Part shown: one piece after another, positions 5,570 through 37,417 of the stretch | How the letters are laid out: each line of letters begins with the position of its first letter | Position numbering within the stretch: position 1 is the stretch's first letter | IMG/VR virus record: IMGVR_UViG_3300025770_001492 | Coordinates: 181,523 to 245,522 of that record | DNA length: 64,000 bases | Direction: 5' to 3' (one strand) | Notes under the pieces: generated by a model | The model's input: the letters and a program-made list of their open reading frames with translations, nothing else | The model's database searches: none | Told to the model about the DNA's origin: nothing | Position numbers and translations under genes: made by a program

Positions 5570-8500
5570 ATGTCAATTCGTGCATTGCAAGATTATACGT
5601 ATTATTCAAAATACGCACGTTACAACAAAAAAGAAATAAGAAGAGAAACATGGAATGAAGCGAGCGGTAGAGTCGAAGACATGCACATTAGGAAGTACCC
5701 AGAAGTTGAAGAAGACATTAGGTGGGCGTTTAAGATTTCTAAAGATAAAAGAGTATTAGGATCACAAAGAGCATTGCAGTTCGGAGGCACTCCCATAGAA
5801 AAGAAAAATGCAAGAATGTATAATTGCACTGTTTCTTTTTGTGATCGGATGAGATTTTTTCAAGAGTGCTTTTGGCTTTTGCTTTGTGGATGTGGAACAG
5901 GATTTTCTGTTCAAAAACACCACATTGGAAAACTACCCGACTTTGTGGAAAATTTAAATGGTGAACGTGGACTCAGTTCCCGTAAAGAAAGAATATTCAC
6001 AGTCCCAGATACAATTGAAGGCTGGGCAGATTCACTAGGAATTTTGCTGGCCACTTATATGCCTCATCCTGACTACCTCGACTGGAAAGGATGCAATGTT
6101 AAATTTGACTTTTCTCAAATCAGACCCAAAGGAGCACATTTGGCATCAGGAGTTGGAAAAGCTCCTGGTCCAGAACCTCTGATACAAGCTTTGAAAACGA
6201 TTAGGGAAATGCTTGATGAGCGTGTAAAGCAAGGCCACACACGTCTGAGGACAATCGATGCATATGATGTAATTATGCACGCTAGTGATGCGGTTTTGTC
6301 TGGTGGCGTTCGTAGATCTGCAACCATTTGCATTTTCGCACCAGACGATGAAGACATGATTAATGCAAAAACGGGGAATTGGTTTGTCGATAACCCTCAA
6401 CGAGCACGATCTAACAACTCTGCACTGTTGCTAAGAAACGAAACTTCAAAAGATGAATTTGAAAAAATTATGACTGCTGTGAAGCAGTTTGGAGAGCCAG
6501 GTTTTTACTTTAGCGACAGCACGGAACAGCTTCCAAATCCGTGCTTTCATAAAGATACACGTATTGCCACCAAAGATGGACTCGTTGGGATTGAGAGCCT
6601 TTATAAATCTGGCCAGCTTAACGAAGTGGTTGCAGATAATCGGGCTGGTGCCGGTGATGAATTAAACTTAGAAAACACTGGTGTTTCATTACTTCCTGCG
6701 TCAAGAGTCAAGCTGACTCAAAAGAATGCAGATATTTATGAGGTTCGCACCAAGCATGGGCACTCTGTCAAAGTGACATTAAATCATGAATTTCCAACAA
6801 CAAGAGGCAGGCTTCAACTAAAAGATATGGTTGAAGGAGATGAAATTCTCCTTCAATCAGAAGAAGGTTCGTGGGGAGATCGTGGATCTTATTCTCAAGG
6901 GCTTATTCTTGGAATGATCACTGGTGATGGTACTTTTTCCACGAAAGAAAAAAACAACAAACCTTTCAACGAAGCATTTATTGATGTTTGGGAAGATGAC
7001 TTTGGTCAATTAGGGCTTATTCAAAGCGTTGTAAATGACGAGATTATGGAATTGCCCAGCCTAAGCAATGGCGGTAGAAAATACGGCTGCTTAGAGTGGG
7101 TTAATCAAACAACAAACGAAACAACAGACAAAAATAGAATTGGCGGAAGCCGACTTTATAGATTTCTTGTTGAAGTTCTTGGAATTGAAAACCCACGATC
7201 TATAAAAAACAAACTGCCAGAATGTGTTTGGCAAGGCTCTAGAGAGTTTGTTCAAGGATACTTGCAAGGGTTGTTTTTTGCAGATGGCAGTACACAAATG
7301 TCAGGCCATGGAACAAAGGCCACTCTTTCTTATAGGCTGAACCAAAGCAATGAAAAATTGCTTCAGGAAGTGCAGAATATTCTTTCTAATTTTGGAATAG
7401 TTTCAAACATCTGCCTTAGACGTGAGGAAGGACATCGACTTCTTCCCGATGGAAGCGGTGGAAAGAAAGATTATTTTTGCAAAGCAAATTATGACTTGAT
7501 CATGAACCGACCAAATGCAATTGTTTTTGATGAAAAAGTTGATTGGATTGGTCGCAAAAAAGTAATCTGTGAAAGTTTTTGGGAAATCCGAGGTAAGGAT
7601 TGCAGAAAGCCAGAGAGATTTAAAACAAAAATAGAATCAATCGAGTATGATTCTACCGATGATGTTTTTTGTTTGAAACAACCAAAAACCAATACTGTTA
7701 TTGCAAATGGCTGTGTAGTTGGACAGTGCGTTGAAATCGGAATGTGGCCTGTAGATGAAAAAACAGGAGAAAGCGGGTGGCAGTTCTGCAATCTTTGCGA
7801 AATCAATGGTAAAAAAATAAAGTCAAAAGAAGACTTTGAAATAGCAGCGAAAGCAGCGGCTATAATCGGAACGTTGCAGGCAGGATATGCTAGTTTTGAT
7901 TATCTCGGAAAAACTACAGAAAACATTGTCAAAAGAGAAGCTTTGCTTGGGGTCTCTATAACTGGAATGCAAGACAATCCTGACATTATCTTTGATCCTA
8001 AGACTCAAAGAGAAATGGCAAAGTTGGTTGTTAAAGTCAATAAAGAAATGGCTGCTAAAATTGGAATCAATCCAGCCGCAAGATGCACATGTGTAAAACC
8101 AGCAGGAACAACTAGCTGTATGCTTGGGAGTGCAAGCGGAGTCCATCCGCATCATGCCAGAAGATACTTCAGACGAGTTCAAGCAAATTCTTTAGAGCCT
8201 GTTTATCAATATTTCAAGGAAAACAATCCTTGTGCTGTAGAAAAGAGTGCATACAAAAGCACTGATGGTGTGATAACTTTTTGCATAGAGGTTCCAGACG
8301 GTGCAAAAACTAAAAATGACATGCCTGCGTTGAGCTTGTTGGAGTGCGTTAAGTCAACCTATAACAATTGGGTAGAAAGCGGAAAGCAAAAAGAACTTTG
8401 CACTCAAGATTGGTTGACACACAATGTTTCCAATACGATAAATGTTCGCCCTGAAGAGTGGGATGAAGTTTCTGGTTACATATACAAAAACAGAAACTAT

Positions 8501-9037
8501 TTTTCAGGAATCGCTTTACTTCCTCAATCTGGAGATTTAGATTACACTCAGGCACCTATGTTAAATGTTCACACCCCAAGAGAAATTCTTAAAATGTATG
8601 GAGAAGGGTCTTTGATGGCAAGTGGGTTGATTGTAGGTGGTTTGCATGCGTTTGAAGATGATTTATGGAAAGCCTGCAACACTGTTTTAGGATTTGAAAC
8701 TCTTGAAGAGCCTTTGTTCCCAGAGAACTCACAACTAGAAAAAAACACAACTGAGGAATACACCATCGCTGCACTTCAGGCGTGGAAGGAAGAAACTGAA
8801 ATTTATGAGAAGAAAATCGATTGGGTCAGAAGAGTCGAGCAATTTGCAAAGAGATATTGTGAAGACGATGTTCGAAAATGCACTTACCTTTTGAAAGAAG
8901 TAAACAACTGGAAGAAGTGGCTAGACCTTCAGAGAGAGTATAAGGATATTGATTATACTCAACTAATTGAGAAAGAAGATACGACCAAGCCAATGGAAAC
9001 AATTGCCTGTGCTGGTGGTAAATGTGACATTATTTAG
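5570..9037 (+). CDS. nrdJ: Class II (B12-dependent, RTPR-type) ribonucleotide reductase containing an intein
   Basis: GVRRSATI, NPQRARSNNS, GEPGF, NP|CVEI after intein removal, TCVKPAGT, C-terminal CAGGKC redox pair. Confidence 0.92.
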   Translation: MSIRALQDYTYYSKYARYNKKEIRRETWNEASGRVEDMHIRKYPEVEEDIRWAFKISKDKRVLGSQRALQFGGTPIEKKNARMYNCTVSFCDRMRFFQECFWLLLCGCGTGFSVQKHHIGKLPDFVENLNGERGLSSRKERIFTVPDTIEGWADSLGILLATYMPHPDYLDWKGCNVKFDFSQIRPKGAHLASGVGKAPGPEPLIQALKTIREMLDERVKQGHTRLRTIDAYDVIMHASDAVLSGGVRRSATICIFAPDDEDMINAKTGNWFVDNPQRARSNNSALLLRNETSKDEFEKIMTAVKQFGEPGFYFSDSTEQLPNPCFHKDTRIATKDGLVGIESLYKSGQLNEVVADNRAGAGDELNLENTGVSLLPASRVKLTQKNADIYEVRTKHGHSVKVTLNHEFPTTRGRLQLKDMVEGDEILLQSEEGSWGDRGSYSQGLILGMITGDGTFSTKEKNNKPFNEAFIDVWEDDFGQLGLIQSVVNDEIMELPSLSNGGRKYGCLEWVNQTTNETTDKNRIGGSRLYRFLVEVLGIENPRSIKNKLPECVWQGSREFVQGYLQGLFFADGSTQMSGHGTKATLSYRLNQSNEKLLQEVQNILSNFGIVSNICLRREEGHRLLPDGSGGKKDYFCKANYDLIMNRPNAIVFDEKVDWIGRKKVICESFWEIRGKDCRKPERFKTKIESIEYDSTDDVFCLKQPKTNTVIANGCVVGQCVEIGMWPVDEKTGESGWQFCNLCEINGKKIKSKEDFEIAAKAAAIIGTLQAGYASFDYLGKTTENIVKREALLGVSITGMQDNPDIIFDPKTQREMAKLVVKVNKEMAAKIGINPAARCTCVKPAGTTSCMLGSASGVHPHHARRYFRRVQANSLEPVYQYFKENNPCAVEKSAYKSTDGVITFCIEVPDGAKTKNDMPALSLLECVKSTYNNWVESGKQKELCTQDWLTHNVSNTINVRPEEWDEVSGYIYKNRNYFSGIALLPQSGDLDYTQAPMLNVHTPREILKMYGEGSLMASGLIVGGLHAFEDDLWKACNTVLGFETLEEPLFPENSQLEKNTTEEYTIAALQAWKEETEIYEKKIDWVRRVEQFAKRYCEDDVRKCTYLLKEVNNWKKWLDLQREYKDIDYTQLIEKEDTTKPMETIACAGGKCDII
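6542..7726 (+). mobile_element. 395-aa intein with LAGLIDADG homing endonuclease, ending in Gly-Gln
   Basis: Starts CFHKDTRIAT; LILGMITGDG and YLQGLFFADG blocks; ends DVFCLKQPKTNTVIANGCVVGQ before the +1 catalytic Cys. Confidence 0.93.
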
Positions 9038-17974: not shown

Positions 17975-18472
17975 TCATGCTACTTTCGAGAGCATTTCTT
18001 TTGCTTTATTCTCTATGTTTTTTAAACTCTCTGTTTCTTTTTGTTTTATAGACTCTAGCTCTTCTTCTATTCTTTTTCTCTCTGTGATGCACATCATGGT
18101 TCCATGGAGAGTGTTGTCACAGTTCAGGGATGCGGTGATTGCCACCCATATACGGTCTCCAGCCTTGGCACTAGGGATGCATCCCATTTTGCCTCTTTTG
18201 TTTGATAGCTTAAATTGTACTTCATAATTTTCTAAAGTATTATTATTGTCGCACAAATCAACAAGAAGCTTTTCTCTTGTTGGGCAACCGCAGTATATAT
18301 CTTTTATGTTTGTGCCAATTAATTCTTTTGCACTATTGTAACCAAACATTCTAGCACAGAAATCATTAGCTTTCAAAAAGGTTCCATCAATGGAAGTTTT
18401 ATAAATTCCAATAGGAATACTTTGCATCATTTTTTTACATTCTTGTAATTCTTTAATTTGTTGTACATCCAT
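17975..18472 (-). CDS. Stand-alone PAS-domain protein
   Basis: IPIGIYKTSIDGTFLKANDFCARMFGY...ELIG...IWVAITA...ITERKRIEEEL. Confidence 0.85.
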   Translation of the reverse strand: MDVQQIKELQECKKMMQSIPIGIYKTSIDGTFLKANDFCARMFGYNSAKELIGTNIKDIYCGCPTREKLLVDLCDNNNTLENYEVQFKLSNKRGKMGCIPSAKAGDRIWVAITASLNCDNTLHGTMMCITERKRIEEELESIKQKETESLKNIENKAKEMLSKVA

Positions 18473-18546
18473 GTGCGGTTCCTTCCAAAATTACTAGTAC
18501 TGTATCTATAACAAGCTTTGAACTTTTATGGTTCGTTTGGAAAAAT

Positions 18547-19500
18547 TTAATATACAACTTTAGTTTCTTCTAAGATTTTATTACAACTTGAAATCATTTT
18601 TTTAGGATATTCTTTGTATTTTGTGATGTCCACTGGCCAGTCATCGTTCGATAGTCTTTTTTCCCCCATTAGAATTCCATTTAAGTATAAGCTTTTGGCT
18701 TTTTTATAATTTTTCATTTGATAGTAAATATCAGCCAGTAGACACCAAAACTCTGCCATTAACGGCCTTACCGCCAAGCACGGTAAAATTTGTTGAATTG
18801 ATTTTTTATAATCTTTTTCATGAGTTAAAAAAACAATTGCCATATAGTATTTCATCATGACGACTGATTTTCCTTGACCTTCTTGGAAAAGGTATCGGTT
18901 TGCTTCATTTATAAAATGTTCATACTCTCCCATTCGCAACAAGTTGCATGCTTTGTAGTAAATGGGACCTGATAGTGTGGGACTGTCTTTCATCCAATTT
19001 TCTACAATTTCAAGTTTCTCTTTAGGATTTTGAATTTCCTGCGAGAACACTACAACAGGTATCAGGTTCGAGCATTGTATGTCAACATGTTCGTGAACAG
19101 GGTTTTTGTACTTCAAGGATTTATCTTCATTCCATATTCGAACTTCTTTGGTTATGTTTTTATTTTGCATAACTTGAATTAAATACGCAGTAGAAGCGGC
19201 ATCTTCTTCGTTTAGCAACTGAATTTTGTCATGCCCTTTAACCAAGAACTCCCAAGGCTCTAGAAAAAATATCCATTTTGATTTTGTTTTTTCTATTAAT
19301 TTGTTTTTAGCCTTGCTGAAATCTTTTTCCCACTTAATTTTGTATATGTCGCAATTAAATTTTTTGCATATTTTTAAAGTGTCATCTGTGCTTCCCAAAT
19401 CTCCTATTACTATTTGGCAATCAATTGAAAATATAGATGTTAAGCATTTTTCTATAGTTTTACTATTGTTTTTTGTCAGCAGGCAGATCGACAACGACAT
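18547..19500 (-). CDS. GT2-family glycosyltransferase with TPR-like C-terminus
   Basis: SICLLTKN, DLGSTDDT, WEKDFSKAKN; DxD position reads LEPWE. Confidence 0.8.
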   Translation of the reverse strand: MSLSICLLTKNNSKTIEKCLTSIFSIDCQIVIGDLGSTDDTLKICKKFNCDIYKIKWEKDFSKAKNKLIEKTKSKWIFFLEPWEFLVKGHDKIQLLNEEDAASTAYLIQVMQNKNITKEVRIWNEDKSLKYKNPVHEHVDIQCSNLIPVVVFSQEIQNPKEKLEIVENWMKDSPTLSGPIYYKACNLLRMGEYEHFINEANRYLFQEGQGKSVVMMKYYMAIVFLTHEKDYKKSIQQILPCLAVRPLMAEFWCLLADIYYQMKNYKKAKSLYLNGILMGEKRLSNDDWPVDITKYKEYPKKMISSCNKILEETKVVY

Positions 19501-19648
19501 TGAACCTCTCCTTTAACAAGTGAGACAGACCAATAGACTCTGGGGACATTTCCATAGAATCATAGTGTTTCTTCAAGTCTATATAACATTTTTCAGCGTC
19601 TGGACTCTCTAATAATCTTAGGTAATGTTGAATTATTTCATCTTTCAT
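19463..19648 (-). CDS. Hypothetical protein
   Basis: 61-aa ORF overlapping the GT2 start. Confidence 0.45.
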   Translation of the reverse strand: MKDEIIQHYLRLLESPDAEKCYIDLKKHYDSMEMSPESIGLSHLLKERFNVVVDLPADKKQ

Positions 19649-19937
19649 AAAATTATTATAGAAAGTTGCATCACTTTAAGAAAGGTGTAGAAATTATATC
19701 TGATAAAAAAACAAAGTTTCTCCCTATCTTATAGGATCAGAACAGGAATGTACAATAAGCAACAATTAACCAACCAACTAACAAAGGGTTGAAAATGTTT
19801 TAGATCTTGCAAGGGATTCTGGAATTGATCTTTATAATTATAAAGATCAAGGAGGTCTAATTGACGCTGTAACAGGTAAGCGGATGTTTCAAGAACAACG
19901 TCTACAAATTGCAAGATACGAATTAATATGAGGTAAA

Positions 19938-20483
19938 ATGTCCACAGAATATTTAAACAATAAAACTTTTGAAGTAATGATATGTAAATTTCAAGGGTCT
20001 AAAAGAAATAAAGCAAGATATGAATTAATTTTAGAAGATTTAAAAGACAAAAGAAAAAGAAAAAATAAAAGAAAAGCAAACACAAAAGAAGACAACAAGT
20101 CATTAAATCAGAATGTGAAATTATACGACCAAGCAAGTCAAGACTATAGCGACTCACAAGTAGACTTGGCAAATGCTTTTTACAAGCTTTCTGAGAACAT
20201 TGTGAGATATGCCAAATTCAATCTAATTGATGTAGACGATGCTGTTCAAGAAGGCGTAATGATTTGTTTTGACAAAATAGATCGTTTTGACCCCCAAAAA
20301 GGAAAAGCTTTCAACTACATGACGACGTGTATATTAAATCACTTCCGACAGCTTTATAGGACTGCTAGAAATTATAATGAATTAAAGAAAAAATATCATG
20401 ATTTTCTAAATATTCAACTGTATTCCCCCGCCTTTAGAAACGGGAAAGATCTCAGGACAAACTCGTGGAATGATAGAAGATAG
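19938..20483 (+). CDS. T4 gp55-like late sigma factor (sigma70 region 2 type)
   Basis: DDAVQEGVMICFDKIDRFDPQKGKAFNYMTTCILNHF; RBS gaggt. Confidence 0.75.
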   Translation: MSTEYLNNKTFEVMICKFQGSKRNKARYELILEDLKDKRKRKNKRKANTKEDNKSLNQNVKLYDQASQDYSDSQVDLANAFYKLSENIVRYAKFNLIDVDDAVQEGVMICFDKIDRFDPQKGKAFNYMTTCILNHFRQLYRTARNYNELKKKYHDFLNIQLYSPAFRNGKDLRTNSWNDRR

Positions 20484-20552
20484 ATTTATTTTTAAAACAT
20501 GCATTGAAATGAGTGAATGGTTTTTATATATTTGATGTTGTAAGGATAAACT

Positions 20553-20810
20553 ATGCAAAACACAGACATGATAGACATTCTTGAAAGACAAGAAGTTATA
20601 GACAAGCTTGTTGATAAAGGATATGGAGAACTGGTTGAGGCATTTCTTTTAAATGAGTCAACAGTGTATACAAAAAAAGGTAGACTTAACAAGTGTGGAG
20701 CTTGCAGGGTTCTCGGGTGGAAAACCAAGAAATTAGAGGATGCCCTAGCAGAGTGCAGAGAAATACTTGCTTCTGAATTTGACGACTTAGTCGAAGAAGA
20801 TGAAGATTAA
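20553..20810 (+). CDS. Hypothetical protein
   Basis: TATATA at 20525 and RBS aagga upstream. Confidence 0.6.
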   Translation: MQNTDMIDILERQEVIDKLVDKGYGELVEAFLLNESTVYTKKGRLNKCGACRVLGWKTKKLEDALAECREILASEFDDLVEEDED

Positions 20811-20904
20811 GATCATCCGCCGTTGCATCTTAGCAAGCCCTTTGCCGCTTAGAGCGAGTTTCTCGATTGAGGACTGGACTGAAGGTTATTGGAAGGTGAT
20901 TGTG

Positions 20905-21417
20905 TTATTGTGTTATTATGTAAGCTCTGTCGTATCTTAAGGTTAATTCGCAAACCACATGTTCGGAATCACCATAATCTAAATCTCCAAAGTCTACGCT
21001 TTGAGGATATAGGTTTTCGTATCGCCATATTTCTATAGGGTCGCCACAGCCACTTAGCATTGAAAGGTCCCCATTCTTTTTGAATCCTTCATTTGGCACG
21101 TCCCATTCCCCATTGTTGTTTCCGCCAGGGTTGTATATCTCCTGAATCCAGCCAAATATTGGATGATATTGTTTTGCCAAATCATATAACACTAGTGTTA
21201 TAGGTTTCCAATCGGGTTTCACGGGGTAATATATTGTTTCATTTAGATGTTGAGCTTCCTGTTCTTTGAAGTCTATAGAGGGCCTAGCAGATTTACTTGG
21301 AGGCAATGAGTTAACGCCTGATTGAGATATTCCTGGTATAGAAAACTCCCATCTAAACTTTTGCTTCCAGCATAAGCTTTTTCTTTCAAGTCCAAAATCA
21401 AGTCCCATATTAGCCAT
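20905..21417 (-). CDS. Tail tube protein (T4 gp19-like), paralog 2
   Basis: KFRWEF, ARPSI, WKPITLVLYD, YPQSVDFGDLDY, LTLRYD. Confidence 0.88.
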   Translation of the reverse strand: MANMGLDFGLERKSLCWKQKFRWEFSIPGISQSGVNSLPPSKSARPSIDFKEQEAQHLNETIYYPVKPDWKPITLVLYDLAKQYHPIFGWIQEIYNPGGNNNGEWDVPNEGFKKNGDLSMLSGCGDPIEIWRYENLYPQSVDFGDLDYGDSEHVVCELTLRYDRAYIITQ

Positions 21418-22201
21418 TTTTGTATCCCAATTCTTGCATGTAAGTTTTTAATTTTGAGTATTTTTCAAACATCTCGTTTTTTCTTTTGTCGCCAAGTTTA
21501 AAATCTCTTTCATCATCTGGAGAAGCTTTATGGATAACTTTCCATTCTGAGATAAATTTATCTGTTTCAGTCGTTTTTAGTTCTCCTAAAAATCTTAAAA
21601 GATCGCAAATTATTTCTTCTTTTTCTTCATTGCTTTTTTGCGACAACTTATCTATTTGAAACAAAAAAGATTCATTATTGCTTTTGTAAAATTCATAAGA
21701 TTTTATCCAAAGATCTATCCATTCTTCTAGATTTTGTTTTTTTACAAAAGTATTTTTTTGAGATTCAAAGGATAAAAAAGGATCTCTAATGCAAACTATC
21801 CACTTTGCGTTGTTCCAAACTCTTTTAAGAGTCTCAACTTCTTTTTTTCTTGCGCATAGCCATAATGCTTTGTGCCCCCATTTTGTTTGTCCTGGTTTTT
21901 GATTTCCGTATCCTGAAATAAATTCATAAATCATTTTTCTCCAAATTGATTCACACCTTTGCGGATTACTACCGGAGTAGTGTGGAATTGCATAGTCTTT
22001 AACCGTTTTGCTCTTGTTTGATTTTTCCCCCCACTCTCCAGCTTGTATCATTTTATCAAGCCATTGTGTACTTTCTTTCCAAGATAACTTAGGCTCTTGC
22101 CCGTGTATGTATATGTTGGGGTGAGAGCATAAAAAAAATTGCATCCATGTGGTTCCACTTCGAGGCGGTCCAGTTATGACTATAGGGTTATCGTATTGCA
22201 T
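21410..22201 (-). CDS. Sulfotransferase-family protein
   Basis: 5'-PSB ITGPPRSGTT; 3'-PB CIRDPFLS. Confidence 0.85.
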   Translation of the reverse strand: MQYDNPIVITGPPRSGTTWMQFFLCSHPNIYIHGQEPKLSWKESTQWLDKMIQAGEWGEKSNKSKTVKDYAIPHYSGSNPQRCESIWRKMIYEFISGYGNQKPGQTKWGHKALWLCARKKEVETLKRVWNNAKWIVCIRDPFLSFESQKNTFVKKQNLEEWIDLWIKSYEFYKSNNESFLFQIDKLSQKSNEEKEEIICDLLRFLGELKTTETDKFISEWKVIHKASPDDERDFKLGDKRKNEMFEKYSKLKTYMQELGYKNG

Positions 22202-22214
22202 GTGTTTATATAGT

Positions 22215-22250
22215 AAAAAAAGCCTGTGTTTGAAAAAACACAGGCTTTTC
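22215..22250. terminator. Intrinsic terminator after tube paralog 1
   Basis: agcctgtgttt-gaaa-aaacacaggct flanked by A/T tracts. Confidence 0.8.
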
Positions 22251-22283
22251 TTATGGCCGGAAGTAAAACATGTTGTAGGAGTT

Positions 22284-22877
22284 CTAGCTAACTGTTCCTA
22301 GTACAGTTCCTCCAGATGTACCAGTACAAGGACCACAACAGCTTTGTGGCGTGTAACCAGGACAAACTGATCTATAATCAACCGAAGCATATCTCAACGT
22401 TAGCTCGATTGTTGACTCTTCGGAACTAGAATAGTCTAGTTCTCCAAAGTTCATGGCTGTTGGCCACATATCGTTCAATACCCAAGTTTCGAGAACGTTT
22501 CCACAACCGTCAAACAGGTTGAGCGTTCCACGACCAGAGTAGTGAATTCTTTGAGATCCCTGCTTAAGGGCGACAGGATCTGTAAATTCATAGACACTGG
22601 CAAGCCAGTTCCATAAAGGTGCGTTATCTATAGTAGCAACGTCATAGTATGTTACTGTAATTGTTTCCCAAGTCGCTTTGCCTGGAATAAAGGTCTTAGC
22701 GTTTTGGAAATTAATTTCCGTTTCTTCAATTGATAGGTTTGGTCTCGAAGCGATTTTAACAAAGTGTTCTTCAACGGATTGTCCACCGCAAATTTCATCT
22801 ACACGAAAAGTCCAACGGAACTTTCTCTTGAAGATCAATTGAGAACCACCTAATTTTCCAATTCCCATGTTTGCCAT
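22284..22877 (-). CDS. Tail tube protein (T4 gp19-like), paralog 1
   Basis: KFRWTF, SRPNL, WETITVTYYD, WPTAMNFGELDY, LTLRY; Cys-rich C-terminal tail. Confidence 0.92.
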   Translation of the reverse strand: MANMGIGKLGGSQLIFKRKFRWTFRVDEICGGQSVEEHFVKIASRPNLSIEETEINFQNAKTFIPGKATWETITVTYYDVATIDNAPLWNWLASVYEFTDPVALKQGSQRIHYSGRGTLNLFDGCGNVLETWVLNDMWPTAMNFGELDYSSSEESTIELTLRYASVDYRSVCPGYTPQSCCGPCTGTSGGTVLGTVS

Positions 22878-22924
22878 AATGTTAATTCTCCTAAATATTT
22901 AGATGATTTTTATTTCAACAAATA

Positions 22925-22949
22925 CCCCCTGCTCAGGACGAGCAGGGGG
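22925..22949. terminator. GC-rich hairpin between sheath and tube genes
   Basis: ccccctgctc-aggac-gagcaggggg; weak U tract. Confidence 0.6.
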
Positions 22950-22963
22950 GATCTATCTATTTT

Positions 22964-25321
22964 TTAGAACGTGTCAGCATTCTCTGCGAAGCTGCCAGTT
23001 CTGTGAACGCTGAATTCTATAAACATAAATTCAACGGCTCTTGTTGGTTGAACACCGATTCTCGCTCGGAACTCATTTCGATCTATTACATCTGGTGTGT
23101 TAAGCTCTTCATCGGCTTGGATGATGAAGTCGGTTAAACCACGACCAATTTGAACTTCTCTAAGAATTTCAGTTGAAATGTCAACAAATCTTTGTCTAAA
23201 GACTTCGTCATGTGGATCGAAAAGTAAACCTCTCGAAGCTTGTCTAATTCTCTTTTCAAGAACAAAGAGAAGCCTTCTGACATTAACACGATCCAGTGCT
23301 GTAGGTCTTCTTTGAAGAGTCTTTTGACCCCATACAAGGAAACCATCAAAATCGCTAAAGTTCACGATAGGATTAACAGCGTTTCTATTTCCGTACATTA
23401 AGTCTCTTTCTTCAAGAGTTGGACGGGAATAAACATCTGAAATTCCAGGAACGATACCACGATTTGCACCAGCGGGAGCAAACCAAGGTTCTGCTAATTG
23501 ATCACTTCTTGCATAAACTGCCATCACTGACCCAGATGGTGGAACCCAAACATCTACTCTATTGAAGTTGTCTCTTACCTTGACCCAAGGCCAGTAAAGA
23601 GCACCAAAGTCACTATCAAATCTAGTAGTGTTTAGAGGGTGAGCACCGTTCTGCCATTGAACTATTTCATCAACAGTTAGACCGAATGGTGGGTCTATCA
23701 ACGCCAGACAATCCTGTCTAAAGTTTTCACAAACGTCCAGCATAGCAAGAACGATTGATGTAGATGGATGACCTGGAACAGCAATCAAATCAATGTCGAT
23801 TTGCTCTGGCTCAGATAAGGCATAAAGCCCACTGTATGACAGAGAGTTTCCAATGATTAGAGCATCTTGATCGTCTGGATCTGATGGAATTCCATCACTA
23901 CCGCCTGCAAGGCTGTATGTTCCATCCAGTGGCGGTGCAAGAGTGGCTGTGTTGTCTTGAACACGAACCCAATCTGATACCAATGTCAGGAATGTTTCTA
24001 CGTAGAACCTACTAGAGGAATCTTTAACAAGGTTGCCCCAAGATTCTACTTGATTGGAATCATTGTAGACATCCATAGTGAAAACGCCTTCTCTAGTATC
24101 GTTTTTAATAACGACTTGAGTTGCGTTTCCATCAACACCAGCACTATCTGCTGTAAGGGTGAAACTGTTAGTACTGGCAACAGAGTTTCCAGTTACAATT
24201 CCGTATGTTTCAACAGCAGCATCTCCGCTTACACCAGATGGGCTTGCACCCTCTGCTGTGACACCATCAAAATCAAACAATGAAGCAGCGGTGCTTTCTG
24301 TTTTGATTAAGAGTCGTGCGTCTCGTCCGTGATGCAGAGTTTGAAGCGTTAGGTTGTCACCAGTTGCAACAGCTTCAAATCCGCCAGGAATATCTCCATT
24401 AGTAATTTGAAGATTGATTTCCGTTAGAACTTCAAGAGTTGTTTTTTCTGCACCTTCTAGAACGGCCAAGTCAACAACTTGAACCACATTGTCGATAAGA
24501 ACATTGTCTGTTCCGTCAACAACAATTAAAAGCTGAAGATTAGAAAGACCAGTGAAGTCCCATTCTCCTGGTCCTTGATATCCATCTACTGGATATCTGT
24601 CTTCGCCAGAAGTAGAAGCAGCAATAGTCATTCCTGTTCCTAGTCCTGTTACAGAACTAGAACCACCATAGATAGCATCTTGAACAGATACCAGTTCTAA
24701 AGAAGCGTCTGGTCCATATGCGAATGTGCTTTCGACTGCAATTCTATTTGATCCGTCGCATGTGAACTGAATTCCGTCAACTGTTGAATCGAGTTGATCA
24801 TTTAAAGCTTCTGCCAGATCTTCACATGTGTATGGGCCTGGTGTTGTTCTGTTGGCGTCTGCCAACACAACCAAAGTTTTAGATGCTAAAACTCCATTCA
24901 GTTTCCAGCGGAAAAATGAATCGTCGCCAAACGAATATGTTTCTGCTGTGTCTGATTGAATTATGATTTGACCACCTGCAACAGGTACGTCAAATTCAGC
25001 AGTAGTGGCACGTTCGTCACTGACTGCGTCTTGGTCGCCAACTCTAACTACGTATAGTTCGTTAGCAACTAATAAATATTGCTCGGCAGCGTAAATCAAG
25101 TAGGGATCACCACTCTCAGGATGTGGATATCCAAATACTGTGTGTAGTTCTCTACTTGTTCTCACAACAGTAGGAATATTAATTGGGCCTTTACTTGCAA
25201 ACCCAACTAATCCTGCTCTGTGAAAAGACTGCTCAGGAGCAATAAAAGATAAATCTTTTTCAGCAATTCGAACGCTTGGTGAAATTGTGTTCGAAGGCGG
25301 AAATCCCCTTAATATCGCCAT
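22964..25321 (-). CDS. Contractile tail sheath protein (T4 gp18-like)
   Basis: SPSVRIAEKDLS, LYWPWVKV, VPPSG, WFAPAG, GQKTL, RVNVRRL, PTRAVEF. Confidence 0.95.
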   Translation of the reverse strand: MAILRGFPPSNTISPSVRIAEKDLSFIAPEQSFHRAGLVGFASKGPINIPTVVRTSRELHTVFGYPHPESGDPYLIYAAEQYLLVANELYVVRVGDQDAVSDERATTAEFDVPVAGGQIIIQSDTAETYSFGDDSFFRWKLNGVLASKTLVVLADANRTTPGPYTCEDLAEALNDQLDSTVDGIQFTCDGSNRIAVESTFAYGPDASLELVSVQDAIYGGSSSVTGLGTGMTIAASTSGEDRYPVDGYQGPGEWDFTGLSNLQLLIVVDGTDNVLIDNVVQVVDLAVLEGAEKTTLEVLTEINLQITNGDIPGGFEAVATGDNLTLQTLHHGRDARLLIKTESTAASLFDFDGVTAEGASPSGVSGDAAVETYGIVTGNSVASTNSFTLTADSAGVDGNATQVVIKNDTREGVFTMDVYNDSNQVESWGNLVKDSSSRFYVETFLTLVSDWVRVQDNTATLAPPLDGTYSLAGGSDGIPSDPDDQDALIIGNSLSYSGLYALSEPEQIDIDLIAVPGHPSTSIVLAMLDVCENFRQDCLALIDPPFGLTVDEIVQWQNGAHPLNTTRFDSDFGALYWPWVKVRDNFNRVDVWVPPSGSVMAVYARSDQLAEPWFAPAGANRGIVPGISDVYSRPTLEERDLMYGNRNAVNPIVNFSDFDGFLVWGQKTLQRRPTALDRVNVRRLLFVLEKRIRQASRGLLFDPHDEVFRQRFVDISTEILREVQIGRGLTDFIIQADEELNTPDVIDRNEFRARIGVQPTRAVEFMFIEFSVHRTGSFAENADTF

Positions 25322-25325
25322 AGTG

Positions 25326-25547
25326 TTATTCTCCCTTACTCAATTTGTCTGATATTTTTCGTGTTGAAATCAAGCCATCTTGTTCTGCTTTGTCAACATA
25401 ATCTGTTTTTCTTTCGTCTGCTAAGAATCTAACATTTTGATTTTTACCAATTCCAGGAATGTTAAGGCATGTGAAAGAGTTAGTTTTTTTCGTAGAACGA
25501 ACTACTAACTGTACCGGCCATCTTTTCTTATTGGTTATTTCAATCAT
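25326..25547 (-). CDS. Hypothetical tail-region protein
   Basis: 73-aa ORF coupled between gp15-like and sheath genes. Confidence 0.6.
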   Translation of the reverse strand: MIEITNKKRWPVQLVVRSTKKTNSFTCLNIPGIGKNQNVRFLADERKTDYVDKAEQDGLISTRKISDKLSKGE

Positions 25548-26536
25548 GATAATTCCTCAACAGCATCTTCTAGCCTATTGAATACCTCAGTAATTTCTTC
25601 TTGCTTGGTGCTGTTGAAAATATTTGTTTTAGTTTTCAACACTGCCTTGCGTCTAGTAATAGGCTGAGGTATATATGTTTCAGCCGTCAGATTAAATTGA
25701 TATTTTACAACTCTAATGTTTTGATCTCCTGGTTCAACGTCTAAATTGTTAGCTATTGAATCTAGTTTTACCCCCGTTTCCCACGGGACTCCTCGTACTT
25801 TTATATATGCAATTGGACTAAATTTCAAAAGTAATTGCTCTATAATTTGATTCATGTCCTCAATGTATAGGGTCCACGCATACAGGGTGAAGCCAACATC
25901 AATCGGAATCCCCCTTGCAGTCCCAAACACAGTATCTCTCTCATGCTTTTCATTCGTTGTAAATCCAGGCTTTCTGTCTGGTCTGTATCTTCTCATCCAA
26001 TCTAGGGCTTTGTGATATGTGTATCTGTCTTGATTGAATTGCAAATCTGATGAGTATATTGCGAGCATAGGGAGCTTGATTCTGTCTACGACTAGACTGT
26101 TGTCTTTTCTAACATTGTCCTGCATCATTGCTGCAACAGCCCTTTCTTGCGATGCCCAAATGATTGGAACGGGATGAGACTTTCCATCCTCATCGATTAC
26201 GACTATATCTTCAAAGAGTTGCTTGACCGCTTCGTCTGCACCTCTTAGCCCTTTTGCATATCTAACTATTGTGTTTCTATCTGGGTTGTCTAAGTCATTT
26301 ACAATATTCCCGCTTTGCATCGGGTCGCAGTTTGCCGATTCTCCAATGCCGGTTTTCTTGTTGCTTGCATCTTCTAGCCAACTCACATCAGTTCTGTCAT
26401 TGATCGATCTATCGTGTTCATCTGCACAATATTCTGGTGGTACATCATTCAAAATGCTTGCCTGTTTAATTGGCTTCTCATTGCATTCGTTTAATGATTT
26501 TTGATTTTGATTTCCTGAGTTGATTATTTTTGCCAT
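25544..26536 (-). CDS. Tail sheath stabilizer/terminator (T4 gp15-like)
   Basis: VPIIWASQER, IKLPMLAI, PIDVGFTL, MNQIIEQLLLKFSP, FNLTAETY. Confidence 0.8.
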   Translation of the reverse strand: MAKIINSGNQNQKSLNECNEKPIKQASILNDVPPEYCADEHDRSINDRTDVSWLEDASNKKTGIGESANCDPMQSGNIVNDLDNPDRNTIVRYAKGLRGADEAVKQLFEDIVVIDEDGKSHPVPIIWASQERAVAAMMQDNVRKDNSLVVDRIKLPMLAIYSSDLQFNQDRYTYHKALDWMRRYRPDRKPGFTTNEKHERDTVFGTARGIPIDVGFTLYAWTLYIEDMNQIIEQLLLKFSPIAYIKVRGVPWETGVKLDSIANNLDVEPGDQNIRVVKYQFNLTAETYIPQPITRRKAVLKTKTNIFNSTKQEEITEVFNRLEDAVEELS

Positions 26537-26577
26537 ACCTGATAACCTTTTAGTTAGTTATGCTTTCATTTACATAA

Positions 26578-27423
26578 ATGAGAATCCAAATGGATAAATT
26601 AGAAATTAAATATAGAACATATTTCAAAGGAGTTCCTCCCAAGAAGATTAAACTCAAGATACCAGGCTGGTCTGGGAGCAAGGAACATGGCGATGGGTCA
26701 AAACCTCAGCCTTGGCACTGTGTTCCATTTGTCGAAGGGTCTACTTATGGTTTGGAATTGATTTATCCATTTGAGACGGAATGTGTAGTTACAAAAAAAG
26801 ATGGAAAAATTAAATTTTTAGGAGACTTTTCCAATGAGTCTCCTTGGAGCGAAAGCGGAGATCCTCCATTTTCATCCTTTGCGCAGGACCACTATGGGTT
26901 CACGTCCTCTTTAAATTTAAAACCTCCCGAAGGGTTCTCAATTAGAATCGAACCACACCCTAGATTTTTCACAGATACTTCTGGCACAGTTCCTATTGCT
27001 GTGCCAGGGCATATACAGAGGTGGTGGCCAAGAATATTTTTTGTAGTTTTTAAATCTCCAAAAGAAGGAGAAAAGCATATATTTAAATGTGGAGAGCCTT
27101 ATGCAAGTTTGTTAGTTGTTCCAAGCAAGATTGATTACGATCTTAAGAAGATGAGCGAAAAAGAAGTTAATTCTATGAATTTGCGTGATAGTAGAATTGT
27201 AAATTCAAAAAAAAGTATTTGCAAACATAATTGGCATGACCATGTTGGAAACAATTTTGATGACAAGTATAAACAGTTGAATAAAATATGCGGCATTCAC
27301 GGGGAAGAACATTTAGACGAATACTTAAGAAGCATCCAGTGCCCTAAAAGAAATACTAAGTTAATAGGAAATTTTGTAAAAGTAAAAAATGAGACACTTC
27401 AAAATAAAAAAAAGAAAAAATAG
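26578..27423 (+). CDS. Hypothetical protein, DUF6065-like
   Basis: WHCVPFVEGSTYGLELIYP and FKCGEPYASLLVVP resemble DUF6065 as recalled. Confidence 0.5.
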   Translation: MRIQMDKLEIKYRTYFKGVPPKKIKLKIPGWSGSKEHGDGSKPQPWHCVPFVEGSTYGLELIYPFETECVVTKKDGKIKFLGDFSNESPWSESGDPPFSSFAQDHYGFTSSLNLKPPEGFSIRIEPHPRFFTDTSGTVPIAVPGHIQRWWPRIFFVVFKSPKEGEKHIFKCGEPYASLLVVPSKIDYDLKKMSEKEVNSMNLRDSRIVNSKKSICKHNWHDHVGNNFDDKYKQLNKICGIHGEEHLDEYLRSIQCPKRNTKLIGNFVKVKNETLQNKKKKK

Positions 27424-35583: not shown

Positions 35584-36477
35584 ATGAGTAATTGTAGTAA
35601 TAATACTTTAGTTATTGGTCGTCCAACCAAAAATGCTATGGCGTCAACCCAGTGTTCTTCTGCTTGTTCCGATTTAGGACATGTAGACCCTTTGAATAAG
35701 AACGAATTGGGTCCACGTAAAAATAGGGACAAAGTCAGAGAACAAATTAGGGATTACATCCTCCACATGATGGGTGCGCCTGCTATTAAGCTTGAGTGTG
35801 ACGAGCAAAATGTAGATTTTGCTATAGATCAAGCTTTAAAAATAGTAGAGGATTACGCTCCAAGAGAGTTTTTTAGTTATTATGTGTTTTTAACTACGCC
35901 CGGAAAAAGTGTTTATGAGATGCCGCCTGATGTAGGGTATGTCAGAAATGTATTTTACAAAGAGCAAGGAACATTCGGGTTTCAGGCATCTGATTTAGAC
36001 GGCGCAATACCTATTGAATACTTTTATCCTGGCGGTAGCTACGCATCTATCCAAGGCGGACTAATTGATCCCATCCAGCCAATTTGGGGACGAATGGGAG
36101 AGTGGGTTTTATACAAACAGTACGAACAGATGTACTCAAGAACAAGTTCGAATTTAGGAGGCTGGGAGTGGGTTGGAGGATATAGAAATATTAAACTTTA
36201 CCCAATTCCTTACAAATCCTCGCAAGTTATTGTTCATTACATGGAAAAGTGTAAAGACTGGCAAGAGGTTACTCAAGCAATGCAAGAAGGTGCTTTAACC
36301 TATCTTAAAGAAATAGTAGGCAGAATAAGGTCTAAATATCCAGCACCTCCTGGACCTGGTGGCGGTATGCAATTGGATGGACAGTCTCTCATTCAAGAGG
36401 CAAGAGAAGATCGCCAAAAATGGTTTGAAGATTTAATTTACAAATTTGGAGACATACTCCCAATTAATTTGGATTGA
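35584..36477 (+). CDS. Neck/adaptor protein (T4 gp13-like)
   Basis: MGAPAIKLECDEQNVDFAIDQAL; PGPGGGMQLDGQSL. Confidence 0.85.
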   Translation: MSNCSNNTLVIGRPTKNAMASTQCSSACSDLGHVDPLNKNELGPRKNRDKVREQIRDYILHMMGAPAIKLECDEQNVDFAIDQALKIVEDYAPREFFSYYVFLTTPGKSVYEMPPDVGYVRNVFYKEQGTFGFQASDLDGAIPIEYFYPGGSYASIQGGLIDPIQPIWGRMGEWVLYKQYEQMYSRTSSNLGGWEWVGGYRNIKLYPIPYKSSQVIVHYMEKCKDWQEVTQAMQEGALTYLKEIVGRIRSKYPAPPGPGGGMQLDGQSLIQEAREDRQKWFEDLIYKFGDILPINLD

Positions 36478-36992: not shown

Positions 36993-37417
36993 TGCATATT
37001 TCGTTTATCAATTGGCTAGAGAACAGAAAATTGGATAACAGGGACACAGAGAAAACTGCTGGAATATTTTTTACTAATGGCAAAAAGGTTTTATTGCTTC
37101 AAAAACCAAACAAGAAGTGGCAATTGCCTGGGGGTCATGGAAAAAAAGGAGAAACCGCTCATGAAACCGCAAAAAGAGAATGTCTAGAAGAATGCGGAAG
37201 TGTAGAGGGTAAAAGTTTAGGATCAATAAAAAACGACAACTGGACTGCCTTCTTCTATAAAGTTGAAAAACTTTTTGACTGCAATTTAAGCGATGAGCAC
37301 ATAGACTGGGAATGGACTGACTTGGACAAGATCAAAGATATCAATTTGACAAAAAAGTTTAAAATCAATTTAGAAGAACATTTGAAATTTTTAAAATCCT
37401 TGAGAGAACGCTTTTGA
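36992..37417 (+). CDS. Nudix hydrolase
   Basis: GGHGKKGETAHETAKRECLEECG; starts MHISFINWLEN. Confidence 0.92.
   Translation: MHISFINWLENRKLDNRDTEKTAGIFFTNGKKVLLLQKPNKKWQLPGGHGKKGETAHETAKRECLEECGSVEGKSLGSIKNDNWTAFFYKVEKLFDCNLSDEHIDWEWTDLDKIKDINLTKKFKINLEEHLKFLKSLRERF

What the first reader, a model, noticed from the sequence alone, without database searches (positions are those of the whole stretch)
20905..22877. Sulfotransferase inserted between two tail-tube paralogs and coupled to the second
Seen: order sheath, tube1, terminator, TATATA box, sulfotransferase, tube2; the sulfotransferase stop overlaps the tube2 start by 8 nt, so they form their own late transcription unit. Inference: late sulfation of a tail component or its glycan, a virion modification I do not know to be described for phages.
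Basis: partly seen in the sequence, partly recalled or inferred. Interest (0 to 1): 0.6.

Follow-up and report, generated by a model that had tools for sequence, protein, structure and literature searches.

The report
Accessory sulfotransferase inside a phage tail-tube operon
A huge uncultured marine phage carries an intact sulfate-transferring enzyme gene wedged between its two tail-tube genes; it is a later add-on that most related phages lack, so it may decorate the virus particle or its sugars with sulfate, but it is not needed to build the tail.

Summary
On the minus strand the order is sheath (22964-25321), hairpin terminator, tube1 (22284-22877), second hairpin terminator, CTATATAA, sulfotransferase (ST, 21410-22201), tube2 (20905-21417). 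The ST stop overlaps the tube2 start by 8 nt.

The ST looks active: Pfam Sulfotransfer_3, intact PAPS-binding motifs, dN/dS about 0.12, confident fold. Its nearest solved structures are tyrosylprotein sulfotransferases.

The window belongs to a huge marine phage (245 kb contig, about half complete). A search seeded with tube1, not ST, changed the picture:
- 97 of 106 related loci have tube1 (often 2-3 tandem copies), a terminator and tube2, with no ST.
- Only 9 of 73 non-redundant lineages carry ST, patchily on the sheath tree.
- The tube-flanked STs form one clade.

So ST is an accessory gene inserted once just behind an ancestral attenuating terminator, and it is dispensable for tail assembly.

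Its wider family is repeatedly fused or adjacent to GT9 glycosyltransferases and methyltransferases, and the phage encodes many glycan enzymes. I therefore favour low-level late sulfation of a phage-made glycoconjugate. This is unproven. "Own late transcription unit" is not supported; read-through is likelier. Virion sulfation stays an open, testable hypothesis.

The parts
25544..26536 (-). T4 gp15-like tail sheath stabiliser; first gene of the conserved tail block
   Evidence: PF16724 at 3.5e-19, phrog_227. Syntenic in all related loci.
22964..25321 (-). Tail sheath protein (785 aa)
   Evidence: PF04984, PF17482, phrog_23 at 8.8e-78.
22925..22949 (-). Intrinsic-terminator-like hairpin after the sheath gene
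   Evidence: Found by the terminator scan. dG -26.6, z -5.8.
22284..22877 (-). tube1: the conserved, probably major tail tube protein (197 aa), with a Cys-rich C-terminal extension and a strong SD
   Evidence: phrog_4542 at 1.8e-26; PF06841 at 26.4 bits. Shortest branches on the tube tree. Present in RNA-library contigs of 4 of 4 metatranscriptomes. Alignment A4.
22207..22253 (-). Hairpin plus U-run terminator/attenuator between tube1 and ST
   Evidence: dG -22.7, z -7.0. A hairpin plus T-run of unrelated sequence sits at the same place in 7 of 8 ST-bearing lineages and in nearly all ST-less tube1-tube2 spacers. Contigs from RNA libraries stop at 22256/22257 in 4 runs.
22206..22213 (-).
   Evidence: 6 copies in the window against 2.1 expected, not systematically upstream of genes. 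A/T-rich stretch in the same position in other lineages.
21410..22201 (-). PAPS-dependent sulfotransferase (263 aa), an accessory insertion; no SD, no signal peptide
   Evidence: PF13469 at 52.9 bits. Motifs GPPRSGTT, HIHGQEP and CIRDPFxSFESQKNTF are invariant in the clade. AF2 pLDDT 89.6. TPST is the top structural match, Z 17.6. dN/dS 0.12.
20905..21417 (-). tube2: faster-evolving second tube paralog (170 aa); start overlaps the ST stop by 8 nt
   Evidence: PF06841 at 32.7 bits, phrog_4542 at 5.6e-25. Sister clade of tube1. Present next to tube1 in 105 of 106 related loci.
19938..20483 (+). T4 gp55-like late sigma factor, convergent with the tail block
   Evidence: PF04542 at 1.9e-7, phrog_234. 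Syntenic across the lineage.
18547..19500 (-). GT2 glycosyltransferase with a C-terminal TPR, conserved next to the tail block across the whole lineage; candidate maker of the glycan that ST might modify (inference)
   Evidence: PF00535 at 2.4e-11, TPR hits, phrog_13126 at 7e-21. Present downstream in nearly all related loci.

Best explanation
The gene encodes a catalytically intact, cytoplasmic, PAPS-dependent sulfotransferase. It is an accessory (moron-like) addition to the tail operon of a subclade of huge aquatic phages.

Ancestrally the operon reads gp15, sheath, tube1 (one to three copies), strong intrinsic terminator, SD, tube2. This makes much major tube protein and little of the second tube paralog. 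In one ancestor the ST landed directly behind that terminator and in front of tube2. Since then it has been inherited, and in places lost or exchanged.

It is therefore most likely made late and at low level, on the same read-through transcript as tube2, and uses host PAPS (inferred).

Its acceptor is most likely a sugar hydroxyl on a glycoconjugate that the phage itself builds. The most attractive candidate is a glycan on a virion or tail protein made at the same time. A tyrosine of the tube protein is less likely.

Shown: the anatomy, the insertion history, the attenuator, the intact motifs and fold, purifying selection, and the family's linkage to glycosyltransferases and methyltransferases. 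Inferred: late timing, read-through expression, a glycan acceptor, and a virion location for the acceptor.
For: Enzyme is intact:
- PF13469 above cut-off.
- 5'-PSB loop GPPRSGTT and 3'-PB R139...S147 are invariant in 16 clade members and at least 90% conserved across 39 family members.
- Confident fold whose best matches are all sulfotransferases.
- dN/dS 0.12.

Insertion history:
- tube1-seeded searches give 97 of 106 loci with tube1-tube2 adjacent and no ST.
- Tube-flanked STs form one clade (SH-aLRT 90).
- ST is in 9 of 73 lineages on the sheath tree, needing 2-4 changes, with ST-less L082/L085 nested inside carriers.
- Two near-complete relatives (459 and 572 kb) lack the family (positive control).

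Attenuator:
- Hairpin plus T-run at the tube1/tube2 junction in nearly all of 89 distinct ST-less spacers and in 7 of 8 ST lineages, with non-homologous sequences.
- No SD before ST.
- In four metatranscriptome libraries, contigs cover tube1 in every run but only scraps of ST and tube2.

Glycan link:
- The same ST family is fused to GT9 plus FkbM/SAM methyltransferase (P0024, P0029), to GT9 (P0048) and to a methyltransferase (P0054).
- It is adjacent to GT9, methyltransferase, a GmhA-like SIS protein, NUDIX or a second ST in Planctomycetota MAGs and other phage contigs.
- This phage carries 8 GT2 hits, GT9-like genes (one TPR-fused), GT17, methyltransferases, a sugar nucleotidyltransferase, an epimerase and at least one further Stf0-like ST.
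- A GT2-TPR gene is conserved beside the tail block across the lineage.

Precedent: C-terminal glycosylation of mycobacteriophage capsid and tail-tube subunits, as cited in PMC12619734.
Against: - No direct evidence of any acceptor.
- The nearest solved structures are protein-tyrosine sulfotransferases, not carbohydrate enzymes (Z 17.6 against 14.5). Atlas structural neighbours are TPR-sulfotransferase fusions, which hint at protein targets.
- Most relatives with the same tube proteins, the same Cys-rich and low-complexity tube1 tails and the same GT2-TPR lack ST. Nothing in the tail proteins co-varies with ST.
- Conservation of position may be plain vertical synteny.
- The GT9 genes beside ST in other phages have no detectable orthologue in this contig.
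- No PAPS-synthesis gene was found in the half-genome.
- The RNA evidence comes from assembled contigs, which break at palindromes and may include DNA carry-over.
Confidence: 0.4

Rival explanations
1. TPST/RaxST-like protein tyrosine sulfotransferase that directly sulfates a tail tube protein. A candidate site is the invariant tube1 tyrosine in the acidic motif FGELDY(S/A)(S/T)S(E/D)E. This would add negative charge to the tube.
For: - TPST1/2 are the best sequence match in the PDB (E 0.011) and the best structural match (Foldseek 2e-8; Z 17.4-17.6 over about 230 residues, 3 Z units above heparan-sulfate enzymes).
- Clade-invariant E36 aligns with the TPST catalytic Glu region.
- tube1 Y149 sits in a classical acidic context and is invariant.
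- ST is flanked by both tube genes.
Against: - Identity to TPST is only 18-20%.
- The FGDLDY motif is generic to gp19-type tubes of phages without any ST, and Y becomes M in most tube2 sequences.
- E36 is not conserved across the wider family.
- Family members are fused or adjacent to glycosyltransferases and methyltransferases, not to peptide substrates.
- Relatives with the same tube proteins lack ST.
Confidence: 0.12
2. The position is incidental. ST is an auxiliary or host-directed enzyme that happened to insert at a permissive intergenic site in the tail operon. Possible targets are host envelope polysaccharide or LPS precursors, a metabolite, or another phage product.
For: - Patchy distribution and loss within the lineage.
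- The tube1-tube2 spacer also holds an unrelated insertion of about 680 nt in L103/L104, so it tolerates insertions.
- Sister STs in related phages sit elsewhere, at the gp13 neck locus.
- PF13469 genes occur in several marine phages with 'unclear' function (PMC10580990; BFVD hits).
Against: - Placement on a late structural transcript gives little time to remodel the host surface.
- The alternative sites in related phages are also inside virion-gene blocks (neck).
- Retained with tight packing to tube2 across ST divergence down to 46%.
Confidence: 0.3
3. One reading: ST and tube2 form their own late unit, driven by a T4-type late promoter (the TATA-rich box) and read as a leaderless or near-leaderless mRNA.
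For: - A gp55-like late sigma is encoded 1.4 kb away.
- A/T-rich boxes resembling (T)ATAAATA lie 4-10 nt before the ST ATG in several lineages, for example CATAAATACAAC-ATG in L032.
- ST lacks an SD, as leaderless genes do.
- No RNA contig bridges the terminator.
Against: - In ST-less relatives the same spot holds only terminator, SD and tube2, with no box.
- TATAAATA and CTAAATA are not enriched in the window.
- CTATATAA copies are not placed before genes.
- L035 has only 9 nt between tube1 and ST.
- Contigs break at palindromes whatever the transcripts are.
Confidence: 0.2
4. The ST fold has been co-opted as a non-catalytic assembly factor or virion component for tube2.
For: Overlap or tight packing with tube2 in every lineage.
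Against: All PAPS-binding motifs are invariant. Tube2 is made without ST in more than 90% of relatives.
Confidence: 0.03

Closest known systems
Tyrosylprotein sulfotransferases TPST1/TPST2 (PDB 5wri, 3ap1)
   Same: Same fold, with the best structural score (Z 17.4-17.6, about 230 aligned residues). Shares the PxRSGTT 5'-PSB loop, an R...S 3'-PB motif with identical 8-residue spacing, and an acidic residue at the position of the catalytic Glu.
   Different: Only 18-20% identity and sequence E 0.011. No membrane anchor or luminal location. The wider family lacks the Glu and is linked to glycosyltransferases and methyltransferases. No conserved ST-specific acidic tyrosine acceptor was found.
Uncharacterised bacterial GT9-methyltransferase-sulfotransferase multidomain proteins and gene clusters (Planctomycetota MAGs; P0024, P0029, P0048, P0054, L051, L052)
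   Same: True sequence homologues (E 1e-41 to 1e-69 to the clade profile, 27-39% identity) with the same motifs.
   Different: These are cellular, high-GC and fused or adjacent to glycan enzymes. The phage gene is single-domain and flanked by tail tube genes. None has a tested function.
Other phage-encoded Sulfotransfer_3 genes (Synechococcus phages S-SCSM1 and S-SRM01, OM43 phages)
   Same: PF13469 enzymes in marine phages with unknown function.
   Different: Only a fold-level or very distant relation. tblastn of this ST finds nothing in 50,697 GenBank phage records. None is reported inside a tube operon.
Mycobacteriophage virion glycosylation (glycosyltransferases beside structural genes that modify C-terminal tails of capsid and tail-tube subunits)
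   Same: A modifying enzyme encoded among late structural genes. The tube protein has a low-complexity C-terminal tail, and a glycosyltransferase lies next to the tail block.
   Different: There the chemistry is glycosylation, shown by experiment. Here sulfation is only inferred, in a contractile-tailed huge phage of unknown host. The tails and the GT2-TPR also exist where ST is absent.
Phage morons (accessory genes inserted between late genes)
   Same: Presence/absence polymorphism among close relatives. Sits in an intergenic slot bounded by a terminator. Not needed for virion assembly.
   Different: No demonstrated own promoter or terminator. Composition is fully ameliorated (GC3 0.28, like its neighbours). 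Retained over deep divergence.

Membership tests
PAPS-dependent sulfotransferase superfamily (Pfam Sulfotransfer_3, PF13469) | Profile match above the curated cut-off | tested here: met
   52.9 bits against a cut-off of 27; also PF00685 at 27.8 against 22.
PAPS-dependent sulfotransferase superfamily (Pfam Sulfotransfer_3, PF13469) | 5'-phosphosulfate-binding loop (PxxSGTT-type P-loop) at the N-terminus | tested here: met
   GPPRSGTT at residues 11-18. G11, P13, R14, G16, T17 and T18 are invariant in 16 sequences. R14, G16 and T18 are at least 90% conserved in 39 family members.
PAPS-dependent sulfotransferase superfamily (Pfam Sulfotransfer_3, PF13469) | 3'-phosphate-binding Arg...Ser motif | tested here: met
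   R139 and S147 (CIRDPFLSFES) are invariant in the clade and at least 90% conserved in the family. The spacing equals that of the aligned TPST motif VRDGRASVHS.
PAPS-dependent sulfotransferase superfamily (Pfam Sulfotransfer_3, PF13469) | Catalytic base (His or Glu) near the acceptor site | tested here: inconclusive
   E36 is invariant in the clade and aligns to the TPST 'GEE' region, but is not conserved family-wide. H74 is at least 90% conserved family-wide. Which one acts is unknown.
PAPS-dependent sulfotransferase superfamily (Pfam Sulfotransfer_3, PF13469) | Sulfotransferase alpha/beta fold | tested here: met
   AF2 pLDDT 89.6, pTM 0.88. The top 25 PDB matches are all sulfotransferases.
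PAPS-dependent sulfotransferase superfamily (Pfam Sulfotransfer_3, PF13469) | Sulfuryl transfer from PAPS | not testable with these tools
   Needs an enzyme assay.
Tyrosylprotein sulfotransferase (TPST/RaxST type) | Closest structural and sequence kinship to TPSTs | tested here: inconclusive
   Best Z 17.6 against 14.5 for the next class, but only 18-20% identity and phmmer E 0.011.
Tyrosylprotein sulfotransferase (TPST/RaxST type) | A cognate acceptor with an exposed tyrosine in an acidic context that goes with the enzyme | tested here: not met
   The tube1 ELDY motif is invariant but equally present in tubes of ST-less phages. Tube2 has Met there in most lineages.
Tyrosylprotein sulfotransferase (TPST/RaxST type) | Sulfotyrosine formation | not testable with these tools
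   Needs mass spectrometry or an assay.
T4 gp19-type tail tube protein (PF06841 / phrog_4542), for tube1 and tube2 | Profile match | tested here: met
   tube2: PF06841 at 32.7 bits against 28.2. tube1: 26.4 bits (just under), but phrog_4542 at 1.8e-26. tube2: phrog_4542 at 5.6e-25.
T4 gp19-type tail tube protein (PF06841 / phrog_4542), for tube1 and tube2 | Position directly after the sheath gene in a contractile-tail module | tested here: met
   gp15-like, sheath, tube1 ... tube2. Same in more than 100 related loci.
Moron-type accessory gene in a late operon | Presence/absence polymorphism among related phages at an otherwise syntenic site | tested here: met
   ST is in 8 of 106 tube1-seeded loci and in 9 of 73 lineages. 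ST-less genomes nest among carriers.
Moron-type accessory gene in a late operon | Own promoter and terminator | tested here: not met
   The upstream terminator is ancestral. No enriched promoter motif. No terminator after ST, since tube2 overlaps it.
Moron-type accessory gene in a late operon | Deviant base composition | tested here: not met
   GC 0.331 and GC3 0.280, within the range of neighbouring genes.

The most novel reading that the evidence does not exclude
A subclade of huge marine phages sulfates its own virion. The late, low-level ST adds sulfate to a glycan, or directly to a hydroxyl, on a tail component made from the same operon (tube2, the tube1 C-terminal tail, or a protein glycosylated by the adjacent GT2-TPR). 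This would be the first enzymatic sulfation of a phage particle. It might tune surface charge, stickiness to sulfated marine polysaccharides, or recognition by hosts and grazers.
Probability: 0.2. Interest if true: 0.75.

Novelty: new member of a known kind. Interest (0 to 1): 0.42.

Why it matters
Post-translational decoration of phage particles is only beginning to be recognised; mycobacteriophage glycosylation is the clearest case. No sulfated phage virion has been described in the literature I could search.

This locus gives a concrete test case. It offers a small, soluble, apparently active sulfotransferase with a short list of candidate acceptors encoded beside it. It also offers natural ST-plus and ST-minus sister phages for comparison.

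The work also shows that a large lineage of 0.45-0.57 Mb aquatic phages builds its tail from up to four tube paralogs. A conserved attenuator sets their ratio, and a TPR-glycosyltransferase sits next to the tail block. Both bear on how very large tails are assembled.

If the enzyme proves to be host- or metabolite-directed, the finding is an ordinary accessory gene.

Tried and rejected
- GenBank phages: megablast of 18000-27000 and tblastn of ST found nothing. The sheath finds only matches below 43% identity.
- Complex prediction of ST against tube1 plus tube2: 'no answer', score 0.00. This is not evidence either way.
- Late-promoter idea: TATAAATA occurs 3 times against 4.1 expected and CTAAATA 12 against 13.2. 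CTATATAA occurs 6 against 2.1 but is not positioned before genes. The sigma-70 scan gave fewer hits than shuffles. The same scan missed the tube1 terminator because the A-tract pairs with the T-run; folding confirmed it.
- The search for related loci with the broad alignment A2 failed because it has no conserved stretch. A1 worked.
- PAPS supply: no APS kinase in the 245 kb contig. No GmhA-like SIS protein.
- GT9, NUDIX and ST neighbours of sister STs were searched in the own genome. Only the gp13-like gene, the 172-aa gene and the NUDIX gene are shared.
- A conserved tyrosine acceptor was sought and rejected as non-specific.
- Identity drops at the tube1/ST boundary between the window and L030, from about 0.90 to about 0.76, with dS 0.5-0.8 against 1.4-2.1. 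I considered this as evidence of cassette exchange. I left it open, because codon constraint in highly expressed structural genes could explain it.
- The Freeman et al. paper (PMC10527164) is not held. It is cited only through PMC12619734.
- The 'moraphage' paper (PMC12619734) describes a different or unverified lineage and does not mention sulfotransferases.
Full report
**What is there.** The window is the last 64 kb of a 245.5 kb IMG/VR viral contig that CheckV rates 49% complete. Near-identical DNA occurs in seawater metagenomes from 17 studies.

On the minus strand the ORFs and family scans give this order:
- a T4 gp15-like sheath stabiliser (25544-26536)
- a 73-aa ORF
- the tail sheath (22964-25321)
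- a GC-rich hairpin (22925-22949)
- tube1 (22284-22877)
- a second hairpin with a U-run (about 22207-22253)
- CTATATAA (22206-22213)
- a 263-aa sulfotransferase, ST (21410-22201)
- tube2 (20905-21417)

The ST stop and the tube2 start overlap by 8 nt. Both hairpins are far more stable than shuffled sequence (z -7.0 and -5.8). Tube1 and tube2 are 33% identical. On a tree they are sister clades relative to the single tube genes of more distant phages (97/93 support).

**The enzyme.** ST scores well above the Pfam Sulfotransfer_3 cut-off.
- Motifs. Sixteen homologues of 46-93% identity keep the 5'-phosphosulfate loop GPPRSGTT. They also keep HIHGQEP and the 3'-phosphate motif CIRDPFxSFESQKNTF.
- Fold. 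The AlphaFold model is confident (pLDDT 89.6). Its best PDB matches are human and tick tyrosylprotein sulfotransferases: Foldseek 2e-8, and VIA-align Z 17.4-17.6 over about 230 residues. The next class, heparan-sulfate 3-O- and N-sulfotransferases, scores 14.5. TPST1 is also the only sequence-level PDB hit (E 0.011).
- Selection. dN/dS against the nearest diverged relative with DNA is 0.12.
- Location. There is no signal peptide or membrane segment, because the P-loop starts at residue 11.

The protein is best read as an active, cytoplasmic, PAPS-dependent enzyme. The half-genome has no APS kinase, so PAPS would have to come from the host. This is an inference.

**Synteny seen from the ST side.** Every contig found through ST homologues of at least 46% identity shows the same block. 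The order is gp15, small ORF, sheath, tube1, ST, tube2, a reversed small ORF and a reversed late sigma. The ST-tube2 distance is always between -8 and +10 nt. After correcting two over-extended gene calls, 7 of 8 lineages have a hairpin plus T-run between tube1 and ST. The hairpin sequences are unrelated, and the ST ATG follows 11-35 nt later without an SD.

**Synteny seen from the tube side (the unbiased test).** I searched IMG/VR and JGI metagenomes with the tube1 alignment rather than with ST. This returned 160 loci. Of these, 106 have at least 1.5 kb downstream of tube1:
- 97 have tube1, often two or three tandem tube1-like copies, followed directly by tube2 with no ST.
- 8 have ST between the tubes. 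They represent about four lineages.
- 1 has neither ST nor tube2.

The contigs reach 572 kb.

In 89 distinct ST-less spacers (median 77 nt), nearly all consist of a GC-rich hairpin, a T-run, an SD and the tube2 ATG. The two-tube layout and the terminator between the tubes are therefore ancestral to a large lineage of huge phages. ST was dropped in directly behind that terminator.

Three further results fix the history:
- On a sheath tree of 73 non-redundant lineages, ST occurs in 9. The distribution is patchy and needs 2-4 changes. ST-less L082/L085 nest inside a well-supported ST-bearing group.
- On the ST tree the tube-flanked copies form one clade (SH-aLRT 90).
- Two near-complete relatives (459 kb at 91% complete; 572 kb with terminal repeats) have no member of this ST family anywhere. 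The same profile finds the window's gene at 1.3e-112. Those relatives do carry other, distant Sulfotransfer_3 genes.

Together these point to one insertion, later losses or exchange by recombination, and no essential role in tail assembly.

**Expression.** The ancestral terminator-SD-tube2 arrangement is a classical attenuator. It should give much sheath and tube1 and little tube2. ST shares the attenuated slot and has no SD.

In four metatranscriptome libraries the assembled contigs cover tube1 in every run and the sheath widely. They cover only scraps of ST and tube2. One contig (21382-21532) runs across the ST/tube2 junction with only 28 nt of tube2 sequence beyond the ST stop, under the 31 letters a side needed to count it as bridging. 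In all four runs the tube1 contigs stop at 22256/22257, at the foot of the hairpin.

This fits attenuation but is weak evidence. Contigs break at palindromes, they cannot rank expression, and DNA carry-over is possible.

I found no support for a dedicated promoter:
- T4-type late motifs are not enriched.
- CTATATAA is mildly enriched, but its copies are not placed before genes.
- ST-less relatives have no such box.

A leaderless late start cannot be excluded.

**What does it sulfate?** Two lines of evidence pull in different directions.

Structure points to tyrosylprotein sulfotransferases. ESM-Atlas structural neighbours are bacterial TPR-sulfotransferase fusions.

Homology and context point to glycans:
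- A profile search of 1.8 billion representatives finds a distinct family, with 45 clusters below 1e-30.
- Family members are fused to a GT9 glycosyltransferase plus an FkbM/SAM methyltransferase (P0024, P0029), to GT9 (P0048) or to a methyltransferase (P0054).
- Other members lie beside GT9, a methyltransferase, a GmhA-like SIS protein, NUDIX and a second sulfotransferase. This holds in Planctomycetota MAG contigs and in other phage contigs.
- In related phages (gp13-like neck protein 81% identical to this window's) the sister ST sits at the neck locus with GT9 and another ST. That site is again among virion genes.
- This phage is rich in glycan enzymes. It has eight GT2 hits, two GT9-like genes (one TPR-fused) and a GT17. 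It also has several methyltransferases, a sugar-1-phosphate nucleotidyltransferase and an NAD-dependent epimerase. A second, Stf0-like sulfotransferase is present, with a weak third candidate.
- A GT2 with a TPR domain is conserved next to the tail block across the whole lineage.

I looked for a tyrosine acceptor. The invariant tube1 tyrosine in FGELDYSSSEE looks like a textbook TPST site. However, the same motif occurs in tube proteins of phages without ST, and most tube2 sequences have Met there. The Cys-rich tube1 C-terminus (CPxFxPxxCCxxC) and its low-complexity Ser/Thr/Gly/Pro tail are lineage-wide and not tied to ST.

On balance I favour a sugar acceptor on a phage-made glycoconjugate. 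A virion glycan is the most attractive but unproven location. C-terminal glycosylation of mycobacteriophage tail-tube and capsid subunits is the nearest precedent (cited in PMC12619734). An earlier in-silico prediction paired sulfotransferases with phage tail-collar-type proteins in bacterial operons (PMC2938197).

[quoted passage not shown] Four literature searches found no report of a sulfated phage virion or of a characterised phage sulfotransferase. The enzyme meets the defining sequence and fold features of the PAPS-dependent sulfotransferase superfamily. Membership of the TPST type is not established. As a genetic element it behaves like an old, ameliorated accessory insertion: GC3 is like its neighbours, and it has no promoter or terminator of its own.

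**Verdict.**
- The evolutionary reading, an insertion between tube paralogs that is co-expressed with the second, is supported.
- The transcription-unit claim is not supported.
- The functional claim, late sulfation of a tail component or its glycan, remains a plausible hypothesis. I put it at roughly one in five for a virion target. The reason is that more than 90% of related phages build the same tail without the gene.

No alternative genetic code was used. The complex prediction gave no verdict and is listed only under things tried.

Noticed in passing
L078, L080, L090, L117, L122, L130 and many others; window 20905-22877: The lineage has multiple tube paralogs. Many relatives, with contigs up to 572 kb, carry two or three tandem tube1-like genes plus tube2. 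A conserved hairpin terminator sits before tube2. The window's phage has one tube1 plus tube2. Which paralog builds which part of the tube is unknown.
   Followed up: partly
window 22284-22380 (tube1 C-terminus); alignment A4; Tube1 proteins across the lineage end in a Cys-rich motif (CPxFxPxxCCxxC; five invariant Cys including a DGCG motif shared with tube2). A variable low-complexity Ser/Thr/Gly/Pro/Asn tail follows. This could mean disulfide or metal cross-links, or a glycosylation site. It is not tied to ST.
   Followed up: partly
window 18547-19500 (-): A GT2 glycosyltransferase with a C-terminal TPR domain is conserved just beyond the tail block and the late sigma gene in nearly all related loci. 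It may be a candidate protein glycosyltransferase.
   Followed up: partly
G000:C1:169409-170044 (+) and G000:C1:127291-127944 (-), outside the window: There is a second sulfotransferase (Stf0-like, PF09037 at 4e-12) next to a histidine phosphatase. A weak third candidate sits inside a cluster with two methyltransferases, a GT17 and GT2 genes.
   Followed up: partly
window 38513-39256 (-), 49548-50471 (-), 43953-45449 (+), 60454-61767 (-), 46178-46840 (+): The window also encodes a sugar-1-phosphate nucleotidyltransferase, an NAD-dependent epimerase/dehydratase, a TPR plus weak GT9-like protein, a GT9-like protein and a C39 peptidase. The phage has a large glycan toolkit.
   Followed up: no
L050:4165-6664, L063:4803-7619; window 35584-37417: Related phages (neck gp13-like protein 81% identical) carry a sister ST at the neck locus, together with another sulfotransferase, NUDIX and a GT9 gene. 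In the window the same locus has only the gp13-like gene, a 172-aa gene and NUDIX.
   Followed up: partly
L103:4544-5250, L104 likewise: In two ST-less relatives an insertion of about 680 nt lies between the last tube1 copy and the terminator before tube2. The spacer is therefore a recurrent insertion site. The content was not analysed.
   Followed up: no
window 22256-22257: Contigs of four independent metatranscriptome runs all end here, at the foot of the terminator hairpin. In one run an Illumina adapter abuts the end. This could be an RNA end or an assembly break at the palindrome.
   Followed up: no
window 20905-22203 versus 22284-25321, compared with L030: Nucleotide identity to the nearest diverged relative drops from about 0.90 (sheath, tube1) to about 0.76 (ST, tube2) exactly at the tube1/ST boundary. 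dS rises from 0.5-0.8 to 1.4-2.1. This may reflect cassette exchange or merely different codon constraint.
   Followed up: partly
window 20553-20810 (+): An ORF of 76-85 aa with no family match lies between tube2 and the gp55-like late sigma, on the sigma strand, in the ST-bearing contigs examined. It might be a late-transcription cofactor; this is a guess.
   Followed up: no
window 5570-9037 (+): The ribonucleotide reductase ORF has 1155 aa and matches its PHROG in two separate stretches. This may indicate an inserted element such as an intein.
   Followed up: no
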